Both the position numbers and the translations under genes were made by a program. This document shows positions 3,331-52,486 of a stretch of DNA of 64,000 nucleotides, piece after piece; the stretch's first letter is position 1, and every line of letters begins with the position of its first letter. The stretch is taken from sequence record MT612989.1. One strand, given 5' to 3'. A model generated the notes under the pieces. That model was given only the letters and a program-made list of their open reading frames with translations, did not search any database and was not told the origin of the DNA.

Positions 3331-5641
<2,311 letters not shown>

Positions 5642-25226: not shown

Positions 25227-26102
25227 ATGTTTAAGAAACTTGCAAAACTATTATCAGTATCTGCGCTAGGTCTAGCACTTGTAGGCTGTGGCACACCTGC
25301 TGAAATCCCAACGGGTTTCGTCGGTAAGATTCAAACGCCTAATGGCTTCAATTTAGAAGCAGAGCCGCGACAACCGTCTAAATTTCGTCTCGATTGGGCA
25401 TGGCGCTACCCAGATCGTCTAGTACTTCTTGACGTATCTGACAGCTTCTACCAAATGAACTTCAACACGTTCATGCCAAAAGATGAGCTTATGCTTGCTT
25501 ACTCAGTCGAAATGACAATGGCGATTGACCCTGCGAAGTACAACTTCGTATTCGCTAAAGTACCGTTCCGAGCACAGACAGATCAGCTTGGTGTAATTGA
25601 TCAGAAAGACGTGTTTAAACGTTATGCGAAAGCTAAACTAAACACGATTGTACCTAGTATTGTAGCTGAATACAGCATCAAACAGGTTGCGTCTGAACGT
25701 CAAAAACTGAACTCGTTCGTTCTTAATCGCTTGAATCAAGAGCTGAAAGATACGCCGTTCGTTCTTAAAGTCGTGGGTGTTACTAACGTAGATTACCCTA
25801 AGACAATCACAGACGCACAAATCAAATCTGCTGAACGTCGTCAAGAAGAAGACACAGTTAAAGCACAACGTAAGCTAGACTTGCTACAAATCACAACTCG
25901 TGAAGAAGTGTCAAAGCGTCAGCGTGAAATCGAACTGTACGAAGCTGAAACTAAAAAGCTAGTAGCTGACAAGCTGATGAACTCTAACGTTCGATTCATC
26001 GAAGAGCAAAAAACTCTACGTGAGCTTGCGAAGTCGAATAACAAAGTGTTCGTACCAACGAAAATGCTTGATGATATCGCAGTACAAACACCAATCAAAT
26101 AA
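25227..26102 (+). CDS. SPFH/band-7 (prohibitin-like) lipoprotein
   Basis: Lipobox LVGC; SPFH-like core (RQKLNSFVLNRLNQELKDTPF..VGVTNVDYPKTITDAQ) and AE/RE-rich coiled tail. Confidence 0.75.
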   Translation: MFKKLAKLLSVSALGLALVGCGTPAEIPTGFVGKIQTPNGFNLEAEPRQPSKFRLDWAWRYPDRLVLLDVSDSFYQMNFNTFMPKDELMLAYSVEMTMAIDPAKYNFVFAKVPFRAQTDQLGVIDQKDVFKRYAKAKLNTIVPSIVAEYSIKQVASERQKLNSFVLNRLNQELKDTPFVLKVVGVTNVDYPKTITDAQIKSAERRQEEDTVKAQRKLDLLQITTREEVSKRQREIELYEAETKKLVADKLMNSNVRFIEEQKTLRELAKSNNKVFVPTKMLDDIAVQTPIK

Positions 26103-26151: not shown

Positions 26152-26511
26152 ATGGAATTTCTTCTACCTGTTTTGCCAATTATTGGCATGTTTGTAATCT
26201 TACTTCTAATTCTAGCAGTGTCTTTCTTCATGGCGAAGATTTTCAAGCTAGACATCAAACTACCTTACGGTAAAATCATCACTGCTGCGCTTCTACTTAC
26301 AGTTGCTGCGAGTGGTTTTAAAATTGCAACATCGCCAATTACTCGTCCTACAATGAACGAAGCAGTCAACGACACAGCCAAGTACAAAGTAGACGAATTT
26401 ACTGAGCTTGAAGCACCTGTACTTGAAGACAAGTCATTCAAGGCTGAAGATGTTGATGTTACTACGCTAGACAGCGAAGAGCGTATCAAAAATCACACTA
26501 AGAACTTGTAA
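26152..26511 (+). CDS. Membrane protein, two N-terminal TM segments
   Basis: Two hydrophobic stretches then acidic tail; AAGGAAA RBS. Confidence 0.75.
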   Translation: MEFLLPVLPIIGMFVILLLILAVSFFMAKIFKLDIKLPYGKIITAALLLTVAASGFKIATSPITRPTMNEAVNDTAKYKVDEFTELEAPVLEDKSFKAEDVDVTTLDSEERIKNHTKNL

Positions 26512-26794
26512 CCTTCCCTGCGCCTCCTGCAACCGTATCGCCACATGTTAACGTGTCACCGATACGGATTGCATTGCTACCCTCGATAAACACTTTCGGA
26601 CTGAACGATGCTGCGCTACCTGCGTGGCAATCGTGGTTCGGAACTGTATTACAGTGCGTTACGTGAACCATGTTATCTTTTGATAATGCAGGTTTACCTT
26701 GCACTGTTACTTTCCCACTCCCACCCGTTACTACTGTTGGCGGGTATGTCCCGTGACCTGTTGTTGGTTCATCTGCACCTGCTAAAGCTGGCAT
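26498..26794 (-). CDS. gp5.4: PAAR spike-tip protein
   Basis: 98 aa; TGHGTYPP, VTVQGKPA, H..H metal ligands, RIGDTLTCGDTVAGG. Confidence 0.9.
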   Translation of the reverse strand: MPALAGADEPTTGHGTYPPTVVTGGSGKVTVQGKPALSKDNMVHVTHCNTVPNHDCHAGSAASFSPKVFIEGSNAIRIGDTLTCGDTVAGGAGKVTSS

Positions 26795-39159: not shown

Positions 39160-39282
39160 CGAGTGTTGGTGTAGTGGCAGCACACGTAGCATACTGTAAT
39201 CAGACATGATTATATTCAGCAACCAATTTACGCATATCATAGGGAGATCGTGGGAACGGTTCGATTCCGTTACACTCGACCA
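39160..39282 (+). ncRNA. tRNA-like RNA A with enlarged anticodon arm carrying the CWGCA motif
   Basis: Acceptor CGAGTGT/ACACTCG-A-CCA, D arm, T arm AACGG-TTCGATT-CCGTT; motif G39208, CAGCAA 39217. Confidence 0.8.
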
Positions 39283-39315
39283 ATGTACTCTCACTAACAA
39301 AGCGAGGTGGACAAT

Positions 39316-39471
39316 TTGATTGTATATCTTCTCGCACTAGTATTCATCGTCCTCTTTGCCTTGGACATTGAAGAAGAAAAGGTGCGCATTCATACTTTTG
39401 CGCTAATCACATGCGAACGGGTCATTCATCCCGTAATTAAAGCGCACGATTCCAGATTGTGTTTTGATTAG
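39316..39471 (+). CDS. Possible small membrane protein (51 aa, TTG start)
   Basis: GAGG RBS, N-terminal hydrophobic run LIVYLLALVFIVLFAL. Confidence 0.4.
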   Translation: MIVYLLALVFIVLFALDIEEEKVRIHTFALITCERVIHPVIKAHDSRLCFD

Positions 39472-39681: not shown

Positions 39682-39794
39682 GTGAAGTTAGTTCAGTTGG
39701 TTAGAATGCCGGCCAAAAAAACGAAGTCTGATAAGATTTCATTCTGCATTCACATGCACGCCGGAGGTCGCAGGTTCGAGTCCTGCACTTCACC
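39682..39794 (+). ncRNA. tRNA-like RNA C (tRNA-Asp-like body, anticodon replaced by motif insert)
   Basis: GTTCAGTTGGTTAGAATGCCGGCC...CACGCCGGAGGTCGCAGGTTCGAGTCC; motif G39735, CTGCAT 39744. Confidence 0.8.
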
Positions 39795-39804
39795 TTCAAA
39801 TTCT

Positions 39805-39929
39805 GGAGAGTTAGCTCAGTCTGGTAGAGCAAAAGAATGTTAAAGAATACTGACAAGCATTCATGCTGCAAACCTTAATAACTAGGTAAATCTTTTTGTC
39901 ACGTGGTTCAAATCCCGTACTCTCCACCA
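39805..39929 (+). ncRNA. tRNA-like RNA D with motif insert
   Basis: GGAGAGT/ACTCTCC-A-CCA, canonical D arm, AAAGA/TCTTT stem; motif G39857, CTGCAA 39866. Confidence 0.8.
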
Positions 39930-41485: not shown

Positions 41486-41601
41486 AGTCGGGTAGCTCAG
41501 TGGTAGAGCACGAAGAATGATACTGACAAGTATCGCTCCAGCACTCCTTCAATTGCCTGTTAAGCACGTGGTCGCTGGTTCGAATCCAGCCCCGACTACC
41601 A
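41486..41601 (+). ncRNA. tRNA-like RNA E: GTT anticodon arm interrupted by 41-nt motif insert
   Basis: AGTCGGG/CCCGACT-A-CCA; CG[insert]TGC-CTGTTAA-GCACG; motif G41530, CAGCAC 41539. Confidence 0.8.
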
Positions 41602-44262: not shown

Positions 44263-44322
44263 AAGTAATCTTACAGCAAACAATACAAAACTTTTATTTG
44301 GAAAAAGCAAAAAGGATTACTG
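44263..44322 (+). ncRNA. Inter-tRNA RNA F with open-form motif
   Basis: AA-GTAATC-TTA-CAGCAA ... GATTAC-TG. Confidence 0.7.
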
Positions 44323-44333
44323 TTTAAATTCAA

Positions 44334-44729: not shown

Positions 44730-44845
44730 AAGAGTGTTTTCAGCAAACAATTTACTAATATTCTTATCGGAAAGAAATGTTTAGGGTTCGATTCCCTTTC
44801 AGTGTTGGTATCACTGGTCTGGACGACGCTAGTAATAACACTCAG
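44730..44845 (+). ncRNA. RNA G: motif stem at termini enclosing a T arm and closed acceptor-like hairpin (Y-RNA/YrlA-like)
   Basis: AA-GAGTGT-TTT-CAGCAA ... AGGG-TTCGATT-CCCT, TCAGTG/CACTGG ... ACACTC-AG. Confidence 0.65.
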
Positions 44846-44849
44846 TAAC

Positions 44850-45450: not shown

Positions 45451-45568
45451 AGAGAGACAATATACAGCAAACAATTGAAATTACTTAAAAGAAGTGATGA
45501 TCTTAACCTGGGCTGATTTTAACCTGAGCTTGCTTAGGCGCAGCTTGAAAGGAAAGATTCTCTCTGTC
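45451..45568 (+). ncRNA. RNA I with open-form motif (less regular stem)
   Basis: AGAGAGACAATATA-CAGCAA ... ATTCTCTCTGTC. Confidence 0.5.
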
Positions 45569-45574
45569 TAGAAA

Positions 45575-45747
45575 TAGTCAGATAGGCGCGTCGCTGAAAC
45601 AGACGATATTTGCTTGTTGAGAATCAATAAGCTAGTCAACTCCGATTTATGCAAAAGACGAAAAAACACTTCGGTATTGTCTGTACTTAATTCGTCGGAA
45701 ACGACACTGTAGCCGAAAGGCAAGTTTACTAACTTAGTTGTTAGTCG
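45575..45747 (+). ncRNA. Multi-hairpin region with GNRA loops
   Basis: GCTTGTTGA/TCAATAAGC, GTCG-GAAA-CGAC, GCC-GAAA-GGC, ACTAAC/GTTAGT. Confidence 0.45.
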
Positions 45748-47445: not shown

Positions 47446-47705
47446 GCAATAAGACATTGTACAGCAATCATTACAAAATCAAAGCAAACTTTAATAGTAA
47501 TGAGGCGCACTAGCTGCTTTCTCAGTGATGACGTGAGCCTGTCGCATTCTCATGGTAGGAAATGACCATTAAGACGGTGTTCGTACTGTCAAACGAAATA
47601 GGACTCATGCCGAATCATGAGTATTTTTCCGATGAGAAACATCGTTATAGTCAATTGAGATTTAAGGAAAGACGATAAAACATTTCTCGAATGTCTGTGT
47701 ATTGC
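47446..47705 (+). ncRNA. About 260-nt RNA H closed by the motif stem
   Basis: GCAAT-AA-GACATT-GTA-CAGCAA ... AATGTC-TG-TGT-ATTGC, several internal hairpins, then terminator. Confidence 0.65.
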
Positions 47706-50399: not shown

Positions 50400-50427
50400 T
50401 TTACATGCATTAAAATTCGCGTATAAT
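50400..50427 (+). promoter_or_regulatory. Early promoter of Ro60-like gene
   Basis: A tract, GTGTTTACA..TATAAT. Confidence 0.8.
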
Positions 50428-50437
50428 CACTTCATCA

Positions 50438-50482
50438 AAGACATTTTACAGCAATTAATTATGAGGAAATGAACAATGTCAG
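50438..50482 (+). promoter_or_regulatory. Leader hairpin with CWGCA motif enclosing RBS and AUG of Ro60-like gene
   Basis: AA-GACATT-TTA-CAGCAA..GAGG..AATGTC-AG; ATG 50476 lies in the 3' strand. Confidence 0.75.
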
Positions 50483-51912
50483 TATTTATGAACGCAATGC
50501 AAACAAACGATTCACGCACAGCAAACGGTGCAGTTACTCACAGCACTTCAGGTAACGAGTGTCTAAACTTGTTCTTCGGTATTGCTGCTATGCGTGGCAA
50601 CGATCAGTCTAAAACACTGTTCGGTCGTGCGTTTGCAGAAAACCCAGAACTAGCGACTCGCATTCTTTTGTGGTCTCGTGATGTTCGAGGTGGTGCGGGT
50701 GAACGTGGTACTTTCCGTACTCTATTCACTAAACTTTGTAATGAACAGCCTGACGTAGCTCGTGCTGTAATGTCGAAAATTCCAGAACTAGGTCGTTACG
50801 ATGACTTGATTTCTGCTTTCGGTACACGTCTTGAACAAGATGCGATCACAATGTGGTCGAACGCAATTGTCAATGACAAGAATGGTCTTGCTGCGAAGTG
50901 GTTCCCACGTGAAAACAGCAAAAACGGTCATGTGTTCAAGCGCACAATCAAGTCTCTTGGCGTAACTGCGAAGCAGTGGCGTAAGATTCTGTCGCTTCTG
51001 TCTGACACTGTTGAGCAGAAGATGTGTGCGCAAAAATGGGATGCAATCGACTTCGGTAAGTTGCCTTCTGTAGCGTCTGCTCGTTATCAACAAGCATTCG
51101 GTCGTAACGCTTCAACACGTTACACAAACTACATCGAGTCACTTCAAAAAGGTGAAGCGAAGATCAACGCTGGCGCATTGTTCCCATACGATGTCGTTAA
51201 GAGCGTTAGTCACGGTAATGCGTCTGTAGCGAACGAGCAATGGAAAGCTCTGCCAAACTACATGGAAGGTTCTGATGAACGCATCATCCCTGTTGTTGAC
51301 GTGTCTGGCTCTATGAGCACGCCAATTAACGCAGGTACAGACCGTTCAGGTGTGACTTGTAAGCAAGTTGCAATGTCTCTTGGGATTTATGTTGCTGAAC
51401 GCAATGAAGGCATCTTCAAAGATCAGTTCATTTCGTTCTCAAGCGACCCGCACTTCCACCAGTTGCGCGGCTCTTCATTGAAAGAGCGTCTTGATAACAT
51501 GAATCGTTCAGGCGAAGACATGAGTACGAACATCGGTAAGTGCTTTGATGTTCTGCTAGAGCGTGCGAAGCGTGCAAATCTTTCACAAGAAGATATGCCA
51601 ACCAAGTTGCTTATCATGAGTGACATGGAATTCGATCAAGCAAACACTGGTGGTGGTTGGTACGGTCGCGGTGAACCTGCGAACTTCGATGCAATCAAAG
51701 CCAAGTACGCACGTGCTGGTTATGAAATGCCACAACTGGTCTTCTGGAACATTCGTGGTCGTCTTGGCAACGTTCCGGTTAAAGCTGGTGAAGCGGGTAC
51801 TGCACTGGTATCTGGTTGTAGCCCATCTATCTTGACTTCACTGTTGGGTGGTGAGCTTGAGCCAATCAAGATCATGATGAAAACTGTAGGCGTCGAACGC
51901 TACAGCTTTTAA
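50476..51912 (+). CDS. Ro60-like TROVE plus vWA protein (DUF2828-type)
   Basis: TANGA, RDVRGGAGER, PELGRYDDL, LAAKWFPRE; MIDAS VVDVSGSM; SDMEFD; VFWNI. Confidence 0.85.
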   Translation: MSVFMNAMQTNDSRTANGAVTHSTSGNECLNLFFGIAAMRGNDQSKTLFGRAFAENPELATRILLWSRDVRGGAGERGTFRTLFTKLCNEQPDVARAVMSKIPELGRYDDLISAFGTRLEQDAITMWSNAIVNDKNGLAAKWFPRENSKNGHVFKRTIKSLGVTAKQWRKILSLLSDTVEQKMCAQKWDAIDFGKLPSVASARYQQAFGRNASTRYTNYIESLQKGEAKINAGALFPYDVVKSVSHGNASVANEQWKALPNYMEGSDERIIPVVDVSGSMSTPINAGTDRSGVTCKQVAMSLGIYVAERNEGIFKDQFISFSSDPHFHQLRGSSLKERLDNMNRSGEDMSTNIGKCFDVLLERAKRANLSQEDMPTKLLIMSDMEFDQANTGGGWYGRGEPANFDAIKAKYARAGYEMPQLVFWNIRGRLGNVPVKAGEAGTALVSGCSPSILTSLLGGELEPIKIMMKTVGVERYSF

Positions 51913-51921
51913 ATAAGTGAT

Positions 51922-51948
51922 AAGGGCGGCATTGTGCTGCCCTTTTTT
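51922..51948 (+). terminator. Terminator after Ro60-like gene
   Basis: AAGGGCGGCA/TGCTGCCCTT then T tract. Confidence 0.8.
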
Positions 51949-51955
51949 GTAAGAG

Positions 51956-52486
51956 GTGAAAATGTTCGATTGGGAAGCGATAGAAACAGCTATCAATAAC
52001 AGTCATCCAAATAGCACAATATACGTTGGGTGTGATAGTAAGCGTAAAAGTGACATGATTAGTTACGCGACTGTGATCATAATTCATCTTGAAGGTAGTA
52101 AAGGTGCTCAAGTGTTTAAAGCAGTTGAGACTGAACCTGCATACTTATCATGTAAAGATGGTATCAGAAGTCGATTGATGAATGAAGTATACAAAGCGGG
52201 TGAAACTGCACTAATGGTTAAGCCAATGTGCGGTACTAGAGGCTTTGAAGTTCACGTTGACATCAACCCTGACCCTACACACAAATCTCACGTTGCCTAT
52301 AACGAAGCTAAAGGTACTATATTGGGATATGTTGGTCAAGAGCCCGTGTTCAAACCTGATGCGTTTGCTGCGTCTTGTGCTGCTGATTACGACGCAGTTC
52401 GAAGAGCAGATAAAATCGCTAAACGAAAAGAACTTAGACGAGCTAAACGAAAAGCAAAGAAACAAAAAACAAAAGGGCGCAAATAG
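51956..52486 (+). CDS. RNase H-like protein, YkuK family
   Basis: IYVGCDS, RLMNEV, EVHVDIN, KPDAFAASCAAD. Confidence 0.85.
   Translation: MKMFDWEAIETAINNSHPNSTIYVGCDSKRKSDMISYATVIIIHLEGSKGAQVFKAVETEPAYLSCKDGIRSRLMNEVYKAGETALMVKPMCGTRGFEVHVDINPDPTHKSHVAYNEAKGTILGYVGQEPVFKPDAFAASCAADYDAVRRADKIAKRKELRRAKRKAKKQKTKGRK

What the first reader, a model, noticed from the sequence alone, without database searches (positions are those of the whole stretch)
50438..50482. Motif hairpin sequesters the RBS and AUG of the Ro60-like gene (translational autoregulation)
Seen: just downstream of the early promoter (-10 at 50422-50427), GACATT (50440-45) pairs with AATGTC (50475-80), which contains the ATG. CAGCAA and the GAGG Shine-Dalgarno lie in the loop. 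The stem is identical to that of RNA H (47453/47690). Inference: the protein binds its own leader and represses translation until the motif RNAs titrate it. This is the strongest link between protein and motif.
Basis: partly seen in the sequence, partly recalled or inferred. Interest (0 to 1): 0.85.

Follow-up and report, generated by a model that had tools for sequence, protein, structure and literature searches.

The report
Ro-like gene leader mimics its RNAs
The start of a phage gene for a Ro60-like RNA-binding protein is embedded in a copy of a small-RNA motif that sits beside this gene family in many unrelated phages, so the protein probably limits its own synthesis by binding that copy; the motif also closely resembles the Class I RNAs of social amoebae.

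Summary
GACATT (50440-45) pairs with AATGTC (50475-80, containing the ATG). ACAGCAA and the GAGG Shine-Dalgarno lie in the loop, about 4 nt downstream of the predicted start of a strong sigma-70 promoter. As a bare hairpin it is not above chance. Its significance comes from family membership: A-A-G, a 6-7 bp closing stem, NU-ACAGCAA, a variable loop, the 3' strand, then CUG(U).

A covariance model built only from free-standing copies in unrelated metagenomic phages ranks the leader second in the 64-kb window (E 6e-5). Orthologous leaders down to 59% protein identity keep the element, with compensatory stem changes, and it always overlaps the AUG or the SD.

The protein (Pfam DUF2828+DUF7788) folds like Ro60. 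In 56 of 78 related loci, and in Felix-O1-like, Listeria, mycobacterial and Campylobacter phages, family RNAs lie beside the gene on the same strand.

Autogenous translational repression by ligand mimicry is therefore the best explanation (about 0.5). Binding and repression are inferred, not shown. More distant orthologues and homing-endonuclease variants lack the leader hairpin.

The RNAs match Dictyostelium Class I RNAs feature for feature, though below Rfam's threshold.

The parts
50400..50427 (+). Sigma-70-type early promoter (TTTACA, 16 nt, TATAAT). The predicted transcript start is about 50434.
   Evidence: 11/12 match. Both hexamers are conserved in orthologues.
50438..50483 (+). Leader copy of the RNA family. 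Parts: AAG 50438-40; 5' strand GACATT 50440-45; spacer UU 50446-47; motif ACAGCAA 50448-54; loop 50455-74 containing SD GAGG 50463-66; 3' strand AATGTC 50475-80 containing AUG 50476-78; tail AGU 50481-83.
   Evidence: sequence; R1, 26.9 bits, E 6e-5, model positions 1-62; pair probability 0.64; conservation and compensatory changes.
50476..51912 (+). Ro60-like protein gene, 478 aa: Pfam DUF2828 + DUF7788, a helical-repeat ring plus a vWA domain with MIDAS residues D275/S277/S279.
   Evidence: AlphaFold2 model pLDDT 81.8. The top five Foldseek PDB hits are all Ro60/TROVE proteins.
51922..51952 (+). Intrinsic terminator closing a monocistronic unit.
47451..47698 (+). 'RNA H', a long family member directly after tRNA-Ser. 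It has AAG, stem AGACATT 47452-58 / AATGTCT 47690-96, ACAGCAA 47461-67 and a CUGU end. The stem is the same as in the leader. A terminator follows at about 47711-37.
   Evidence: Orthologous copies exist in KVP40, nt-1, 1.081.O and D480.
44263..44323 (+). RNA B, a 61-nt family member between tRNA-Trp and tRNA-Asn (AGTAATC/GATTACT, CUUACAGCAA, CUGU).
   Evidence: R1, 40.2 bits, E 1e-8; Rfam RF01414, 31.8 bits, below threshold; compensated stems in KVP40 and 1.081.O.
44730..44846 (+). RNA C, a 117-nt family member between tRNA-Gln and tRNA-Thr (GAGTGTT/AACACTC, UUCAGCAA, CAGU end). It contains a T-arm-like GGGTTCGATTCCC.
   Evidence: 5' part, 20 bits.
45454..45684 (+). RNA D, a family member of about 230 nt (AGACAAT/ATTGTCT, AUACAGCAA, CUGU).

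Best explanation
The window is Vibrio phage vB_ValM_R11Z, a KVP40-like T4-type phage. An early promoter makes a monocistronic mRNA for a Ro60-like protein. The first ~50 nt of that mRNA are a copy of the small-RNA family that this protein family travels with: AAG, a 6-bp closing stem, UU-ACAGCAA, a loop, the 3' strand, then AGU. The loop carries the Shine-Dalgarno and the 3' strand carries the AUG. Proposed mechanism: the protein's preferred ligands are the free RNAs made from the tRNA cluster (B, C, D, H). Once these are saturated, surplus protein binds the lower-scoring copy on its own mRNA, clamps the weak stem and occludes SD and AUG, which stops further translation. This is feedback by molecular mimicry, as in thrS, ribosomal-protein operons and T4 gp32/gp43/RegA. 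Shown: the anatomy, family membership of the leader, its conservation with compensatory changes, its constant overlap with the initiation region, the Ro60-like fold, and the genomic linkage of RNA and protein. Inferred: that this protein is what recognises the motif, that binding represses translation, and that the free RNAs compete.
For: (1) Covariance model R1 was built from 26 free-standing elements in non-KVP40 metagenomic phages. In the window it finds RNA B (E 1e-8) and then the leader (E 6e-5, full length), and nothing else beyond the 5' parts of C and H. It also finds the leaders of L097, L095, L094 and L099. (2) Thirteen orthologous leaders (59-100% aa identity) keep the promoter, 5' strand, NN, [A/U]CAGCA[A/U/C], SD and 3' strand while the sequence between them diverges. 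(3) The stem exists in three versions. GACATT/AATGTC occurs 10 times. GACATA/TATGTC occurs in L099, a double change at the only position not fixed by coding. GAAATT/GATTTC occurs in D479 and L100, where the 3' strand has moved onto the SD (AGGATTTCUGaaaAUG). The element therefore always covers the AUG or the SD. (4) The leader stem tracks the long RNA of the same phage: GACATT in R11Z, KVP40 and L093; GAAATT in L100. (5) The protein's top five structural matches are Ro60/Rsr/phage Ro60 over the full length (E 8e-8 to 5e-6, TM 0.44-0.57). The next matches are vWA domains only. (6) Linkage: 67 pattern elements lie on the gene strand against 4 on the other strand, and permuted-core controls give 0-9. 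R1 gives 79 hits, all on the gene strand, in 56 of 78 loci, and 48 of them lie within 500 nt of the gene. Elements also sit beside the gene in Felixounavirus, Listeria LP-124, mycobacteriophage Clautastrophe and Campylobacter PC14. (7) The leader scores lower than RNA B (26.9 vs 40.2 bits), as expected for an operator weaker than the primary ligand (the reading is inference).
Against: There are no binding or expression data. The stem alone is marginal: MFE z=+1.08 and pair probability only 0.08-0.17 in L093 and 1.081.O. Only the AUG is paired in most versions. Three natural variants with a GIY-YIG homing endonuclease inserted upstream (D480, VH1_2019, CZ01) lack the stem, as does L096. About 70 more distant orthologues also lack a leader element, so the regulation is dispensable or confined to this clade. 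The AUG and the Ser codon are fixed by coding, so most of the 3' strand's conservation is uninformative. The factor that recognises ACAGCAA could be another protein, such as a processing enzyme.
Confidence: 0.5

Rival explanations
1. The leader element is a processing or decay determinant. The machinery that trims the tRNA-cluster RNAs to their conserved AAG 5' ends and CUG(U) 3' ends would also cut the mRNA. A cut after the 3' strand would separate the AUG from the ORF, so expression would be limited by cleavage rather than by repressor binding.
For: Family members embedded between tRNAs have no promoter of their own and have conserved termini, which implies endonucleolytic maturation. The leader keeps the AAG and a CAGU tail in the same register.
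Against: No nuclease is identified. The tail in leaders is CAGU or CAGA, not the commoner CUGU. This idea does not explain why the 3' strand relocates onto the SD in D479 and L100 while still overlapping the initiation region.
Confidence: 0.15
2. The element is a 5'-terminal stabiliser or a cis-assembly site. Either a stem close to the 5' end protects the mRNA, or the nascent protein loads onto its own mRNA. In both cases there is no negative control of translation, and the effect could be positive.
For: The element begins about 4-6 nt from the predicted transcript start in all leaders. 5' hairpins are known to stabilise bacterial mRNAs (established knowledge).
Against: A stabiliser needs neither ACAGCAA nor pairing to the AUG or SD. 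The constant overlap with the initiation region, kept through three stem versions, points to control of initiation.
Confidence: 0.15
3. The element is an evolutionary relic. A family RNA gene once lay just upstream of the protein gene, as it does today in L078, L083 and PC14, and fused with the gene start. It persists without a function of its own.
For: In other lineages free-standing elements end 30-90 nt before the ATG. HEG variants and L096 survive without the stem.
Against: The element is retained down to 59% protein identity while flanking leader bases are randomised. There is a compensatory T-A to A-T change in L099 and a re-invented 3' strand in D479 and L100.
Confidence: 0.1
4. The element is a DNA-level operator for a transcription factor, located just downstream of the promoter.
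For: The motif lies at about +5 to +21 of a strong promoter.
Against: The same architecture recurs inside tRNA transcripts far from promoters. It is strand-specific (79 hits to 0). It shows RNA-type covariation of a stem whose two halves lie 35-250 nt apart.
Confidence: 0.03

Closest known systems
Ro60/Rsr with Y RNAs (YrlA, Rfam RF02553; phage phiLo Ro60 with Yrl1/2, PMC12135203; Chen et al. 2014, PMC4201824)
   Same: The protein has the ring-plus-vWA fold. The RNA genes lie next to the protein gene on the same strand. The RNAs are closed by a stem joining the 5' and 3' ends. The longer members carry a permuted tRNA-like domain that matches YrlA below threshold (29-39 bits). The RNA-repair and tRNA-cluster neighbourhood is shared too: RtcB and RNA ligase lie nearby in Listeria LP-124.
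   Different: The protein is not detected by Pfam TROVE or by sequence search against Ro60. The RNA signature is ACAGCAA just 3' of the 5' strand, not the GNCGAA / GGUCCGA Ro-binding motif. No Ro60 protein is known to carry a copy of its Y RNA over its own start codon.
Autogenous translational operators that mimic the protein's main ligand (E. coli thrS leader/tRNA-Thr; ribosomal proteins S8, L1, S15, L20; T4 gp32, gp43, RegA)
   Same: An operator overlaps SD and AUG. It resembles the primary RNA ligand but is a poorer match. Competition with the free ligand would set the threshold.
   Different: Here the ligand is a family of phage-encoded small RNAs for a Ro-like protein. Neither binding nor repression has been demonstrated.
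Dictyostelium Class I RNAs (Rfam RF01414; Kjellin et al. 2021, PMC7919456)
   Same: Shared features: an AAG start; a 6-bp terminal stem whose sequence covaries and whose 5' G pairs with the C of the 3' end; the unpaired motif (C)CUUACAGCAA directly after the 5' strand; an AU-rich variable loop; a CUGU end; a length of about 60 nt.
   Different: All Rfam scores are below the gathering threshold (31.8, 30.8 and 22.3 bits against 41.5), and many phage copies are missed altogether. The RNAs are phage-encoded, often processed from tRNA clusters, and have no DUSE promoter. Class I RNAs were reported to be restricted to dictyostelids and are known to bind the RRM protein Rnp1A/CIBP. Whether a DUF2828 protein binds them is unknown.

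Membership tests
Ro60/TROVE-vWA proteins | Helical-repeat ring followed by a vWA domain with a MIDAS motif | tested here: met
   AlphaFold2 model with pLDDT 81.8 and pTM 0.81. The top five Foldseek hits are 9kop, 9l5y, 2nvo, 1yvp and 9nfa over about 510-580 columns. D275, S277 and S279 are invariant.
Ro60/TROVE-vWA proteins | Sequence match to the Pfam TROVE domain or to solved Ro60 proteins | tested here: not met
   Pfam gives only DUF2828 + DUF7788. The profile search against PDB reaches TROVE chains at E 1.3.
Ro60/TROVE-vWA proteins | Binds a small RNA encoded next to the gene | not testable with these tools
   Only genomic linkage was shown.
Y RNA / YrlA (RF02553) | Reaches the Rfam gathering score and carries the GNCGAA Ro-binding motif | tested here: not met
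   The best scores are 39 bits against a threshold of 69, and only for long elements in other phages. The leader and RNAs B-H carry ACAGCAA instead.
Y RNA / YrlA (RF02553) | Closing stem joining the 5' and 3' ends, gene adjacent to the protein gene on the same strand | tested here: met
Dictyostelium Class I RNA (RF01414) | AAG start, 6-bp stem with a 5' G, the 11-nt motif beside the 5' strand, and a CUGU end | tested here: met
   RNAs B, D and H and most metagenomic copies have all four features. The leader has AAG, the stem and UUUUACAGCAA but ends in CAGU. The feature list comes from PMC7919456.
Dictyostelium Class I RNA (RF01414) | Rfam gathering score of 41.5 bits | tested here: not met
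   31.8 bits (RNA B), 30.8 (L039) and 22.3 (L075). There is no hit for the leader or for six further loci.
Ligand-mimic translational operators | The operator overlaps SD or AUG and resembles the protein's primary RNA ligand | tested here: met
   The identity of the ligand is itself inferred.
Ligand-mimic translational operators | The protein binds the operator and represses its own translation | not testable with these tools
   This needs EMSA, toeprinting or reporter assays.

The most novel reading that the evidence does not exclude
DUF2828 Ro-like proteins and stem-ACAGCAA RNAs form an ancient, undescribed ribonucleoprotein, a second Ro/Y-RNA-type system. It is shared by phages of Gram-negative, Gram-positive, actinobacterial and epsilonproteobacterial hosts. 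The Class I RNAs of dictyostelid amoebae, whose function has been unknown since 2004 and which were thought unique to that group, would be the same kind of RNA and would bind a DUF2828-type protein. One candidate is the uncharacterised pull-down partner DDB_G0281243. The KVP40-clade leader would then be the first case of a Ro-type protein controlling its own translation through a Y-RNA mimic.
Probability: 0.3. Interest if true: 0.93.

Novelty: new variant of a known kind. Interest (0 to 1): 0.8.

Why it matters
The DUF2828 family has more than 7,000 clusters in the protein search and homologues in 711 phage records, including the well-studied Felix O1-like, P100/A511-like and KVP40-like phages. 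It has no known ligand or function. This work provides a precise RNA signature and a working covariance model. It also identifies a natural operator, the leader, that can be turned directly into binding and reporter assays. If the mechanism holds, it adds the Ro/Y-RNA world to the classic list of ligand-mimic feedback circuits. It would also offer a concrete, testable lead on what Dictyostelium Class I RNAs bind.

Tried and rejected
(1) Bare-hairpin statistics gave no significance: pattern frequency and fold z-score. The case rests on the family and on conservation.
(2) Rfam at gathering thresholds found only tRNAs.
(3) Sequence searches against PDB gave no significant Ro60 hit. Only the fold comparison did.
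(4) A MotA-box or DNA-operator reading of TTGCTGTA was rejected. The element is strand-specific and occurs inside tRNA transcripts.
(5) I looked for a closing stem in the homing-endonuclease leaders and found none. They do retain GGAG-CUUACAGCAA-UG between SD and AUG. By my own composition estimate, this has roughly a 0.2% chance of occurring in 33 nt.
(6) I tried to test whether Dictyostelium has a DUF2828 protein or what DDB_G0281243 is. Literature searches, a look-up of Avesson 2011 (not held) and a tandem-query search aimed at longer homologues all gave nothing usable.
(7) I checked whether the very abundant ncRNA region of Listeria phage CKA15 (26,236-26,727; PMC12282133) is the element array. 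It is not: the array maps to 25,263-25,574. That paper's speculation that the Rsr-like protein's neighbours are Y RNAs is compatible with this work but is not evidence for these elements.
(8) The pairing statistics of alignment A1 are biased, because its elements were selected for pairing. The strand asymmetry and the permuted-core controls are the unbiased evidence.

Full report
IDENTITY AND ANATOMY. The window is 100% identical to Vibrio phage vB_ValM_R11Z (MT612989.1, bases 124001-188000), a KVP40-like T4-type myovirus. It holds a cluster of about 30 tRNA genes at 39.6-47.4 kb. A near-consensus sigma-70 promoter lies at TTTACA 50400-05 / TATAAT 50422-27 (11/12 match). It is followed by AAG (50438-40), GACATT (50440-45), UU, ACAGCAA (50448-54), an AU-rich loop with GAGG (50463-66), and AATGTC (50475-80), whose ATG opens the 478-codon ORF 50476-51912. 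A terminator follows at 51922-44. The gene is therefore a monocistronic early unit, and the element sits about 4 nt from the predicted 5' end of its mRNA.

IS THE HAIRPIN MORE THAN CHANCE? Not as a bare hairpin. GACATT..AATGTC turns up in 21 of 100 shuffles, and the 67-nt fold is no better than shuffled sequence (z=+1.08). Folded from the predicted transcript start, the closing stem has pair probability 0.64 here and 0.86-0.96 in KVP40, nt-1, VS1, phi-ST2, L094 and L097, but only 0.08-0.17 in L093 and 1.081.O. It is a weak stem that would need a protein to matter.

THE LEADER BELONGS TO AN RNA FAMILY. Eighteen nucleotides, AAGACATTNTACAGCAAT, are shared with the 5' end of 'RNA H' directly after tRNA-Ser. 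The same architecture recurs in the tRNA cluster. RNA B is at 44263-44323 (AGTAATC/GATTACT), RNA C at 44730-44846 (GAGTGTT/AACACTC), RNA D at 45454-45684 (AGACAAT/ATTGTCT) and RNA H at 47451-47698 (AGACATT/AATGTCT). Each has (A)AG, the 5' strand, NU, [A/U]CAGCAA, a loop of 30-230 nt, the 3' strand, then CUGU or CAGU. Orthologous copies in KVP40, nt-1, 1.081.O and D480 keep the pairing through compensatory changes. RNA B, for example, reads AGTAATC/GATTACT, AGCAATC/GATTGCT or AGAATGT/GCATTCT.

AN INDEPENDENT TEST. I fetched 80 IMG/VR loci that encode relatives of the protein. A simple pattern search for A-G(N5), 1-4 nt, CAGCAA, then the complementary strand ending in C followed by [U/A]G found 67 elements on the gene strand and 4 on the other strand. 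Twenty permuted cores gave 0-9. From 26 short free-standing elements in loci at 40-54% protein identity, none from the KVP40 clade, I built covariance model R1. Across both strands of the 64-kb window, R1 finds RNA B (40.2 bits, E 1e-8) and then the leader at 50438-50483 (26.9 bits, E 6e-5, full-length alignment). After that come only the 5' parts of C and H. The leader is therefore a bona fide family member.

CONSERVATION OF THE LEADER. Leaders of KVP40, nt-1, VS1, phi-ST2, 1.081.O and seven metagenomic orthologues at 59-80% identity were read. Eleven representative leaders were aligned. The conserved blocks are the two promoter hexamers, GA[C/A]AT[T/A], NN, [A/U]CAGCA[A/U/C], the SD and ATGTCAG. 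Everything between them has diverged. Three stem versions exist. GACATT/AATGTC occurs ten times. GACATA/TATGTC occurs in L099, where the base before the AUG and its partner have both changed. GAAATT/GATTTC occurs in D479 and L100, where the 3' strand lies on the SD (AGGATTTCUGaaaAUG, GAGGATTTCAGaAUG) instead of the AUG. In all 13 leaders the element overlaps the translation initiation region. R1 also scores L097 (30.8 bits), D479 (21.6), L094 (17.9) and L099 (15.8). The leader stem tracks the long RNA of the same phage: GACATT in R11Z, KVP40 and L093, and GAAATT/AATTTC in L100.

EXCEPTIONS. L096 (60% identity) has lost the element. In D480, VH1_2019 and CZ01 a GIY-YIG homing endonuclease gene sits divergently just upstream, and the leader is replaced. 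These have no closing stem, yet CUUACAGCAA lies between GGAG and AUG. Among 75 more distant orthologues only 3 leaders contain CAGCAA, two of which are KVP40-clade loci. In those lineages the RNAs are free-standing next to the gene.

THE PROTEIN. Pfam gives DUF2828 + DUF7788. Sequence searches do not reach Ro60. An AlphaFold2 model (pLDDT 81.8, pTM 0.81) matches Ro60 proteins as its five best PDB hits over the full length: Thermus phage phiLo Ro60 9kop/9l5y, D. radiodurans Rsr 2nvo, Xenopus Ro60 1yvp, and 9nfa (E 8e-8 to 5e-6, TM 0.44-0.57). The next hits are isolated vWA domains at E of 8e-3 or worse. The MIDAS residues D275/S277/S279 are invariant. 'Ro60-like' is therefore justified structurally. 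The family is very large, with more than 7,400 clusters and 711 phage records.

PROTEIN-RNA LINKAGE. R1 gives 79 hits at E of 0.01 or better in the 78 non-KVP40 loci. All are on the gene strand. They fall in 56 loci, and 48 hits lie within 500 nt of the gene. Many start 24-31 nt after the end of the protein match. Arrays of three to six elements occur in L039, L061 and L075. In cultured phages there are three elements just downstream of the gene in Felixounavirus BPS17W1 and three just upstream in Listeria LP-124. There are three in tandem downstream in mycobacteriophage Clautastrophe and one at -98 in Campylobacter PC14. Long members carry a permuted tRNA-like domain that matches YrlA below threshold (29-39 bits). 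This is the same genomic logic as rsr and Y RNA (Chen 2014, PMC4201824), but with ACAGCAA instead of GNCGAA. Rfam 15 has no family for these RNAs. A 2025 study of Listeria phage CKA15 speculated that abundant ncRNAs near its Rsr-like gene are Y RNAs (PMC12282133). Its most abundant region is not the element array.

RESEMBLANCE TO DICTYOSTELIUM CLASS I RNAs. The only non-tRNA Rfam model that aligns full-length to RNA B is RF01414 (31.8 bits, E 1.5e-4 in 201 nt and 0.009 in 12 kb). The published definition of Class I RNAs matches the phage RNAs point by point (PMC7919456). That definition is an AAG start, a 6-bp covarying terminal stem with an invariant 5' G, an unpaired 11-nt motif next to the 5' strand (the Rfam consensus reads CCUUACAGCAA), a CUGU end, and a length of about 60 nt. 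All scores are below Rfam's threshold, and many phage copies are not hit. Class I RNAs were reported to be absent outside dictyostelids. Their pull-down partners include one protein of unknown function, DDB_G0281243. I could not determine whether that protein, or any dictyostelid protein, belongs to DUF2828.

MECHANISM. The best-supported reading is autogenous translational repression by ligand mimicry (confidence about 0.5). The protein first fills the free RNAs. Surplus protein then binds the lower-scoring copy on its own mRNA and blocks SD and AUG. Shown: the anatomy, family membership, conservation with compensation, constant overlap with the initiation region, the fold, and the linkage. 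Inferred: binding, repression and titration. The rivals are a processing/decay determinant that uses the family's maturation sites (0.15), a 5' stabiliser or cis-loading site (0.15), a relic of an upstream RNA gene (0.1), and a DNA operator (0.03).

VERDICT. The circuit is a new variant of a known kind, a ligand-mimic operator in a Ro/Y-RNA-type system. It rests on an RNA family and an RNA-protein pairing that I could not find described. Interest 0.8.

Noticed in passing
window 39682-39794, 39805-39926, 41486-41598: Three tRNA-model hits of 113-122 nt (50-54 bits) that ARAGORN does not call. KVP40 annotates the equivalents as 'tRNA-Pseudo'. They are tRNA-like genes with large insertions. A sub-threshold YrlA hit lies at 39766-39830.
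   Followed up: no
window 39207-39410: A possible fifth family RNA ('A'): ATGATTAT..TTCAGCAACCAAT, with a partner strand about 190 nt downstream. It is conserved in KVP40 and D480 but lacks the AAG start.
   Followed up: partly
window 51956-52486: An RNaseH_like gene (Pfam PF04308, DUF458/YkuK) lies directly after the Ro-like gene. This synteny is kept in KVP40, nt-1, D480, 1.081.O, L093, L094, L096 and L099. It is a candidate nuclease partner, as PNPase is for Ro60.
   Followed up: partly
L003 2868-3458, L005 2655-3257, L006 2675-3268: A GIY-YIG homing endonuclease gene is inserted divergently right upstream of the Ro-like gene in D480, VH1_2019 and CZ01. It replaces the promoter and leader and changes the N-terminus (MTSL instead of MSV/MSA). 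The leader / 5' coding region is therefore probably its homing target.
   Followed up: partly
L102 about 5000-5530 (Listeria phage LP-124; cka15 26,236-26,727): A ~490-nt non-coding region behind a TTGACA/TATAGT promoter, between the tRNA cluster and the element array. It corresponds to the region reported as up to 67% of phage transcripts in CKA15. It carries no ACAGCAA element.
   Followed up: partly
L039 8605-9054: A phage contig that encodes a DUF2828 protein and six family RNAs also carries a full-length tmRNA gene (75 bits) and many tRNAs.
   Followed up: no
L102 9404-13116: In Listeria LP-124 the DUF2828 gene lies within about 1.3-4 kb of an RtcB-like ligase and a second RNA ligase. This RNA-repair neighbourhood recalls the Salmonella rsr-yrlBA-rtcBA operon.
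   Followed up: no
window 50517-50524: A second (C)ACAGCAA lies inside the gene at codons 15-17 (Thr-Ala-Asn). It reads TACAGCAAAC in the homing-endonuclease variants. It is probably fixed by coding.
   Followed up: no
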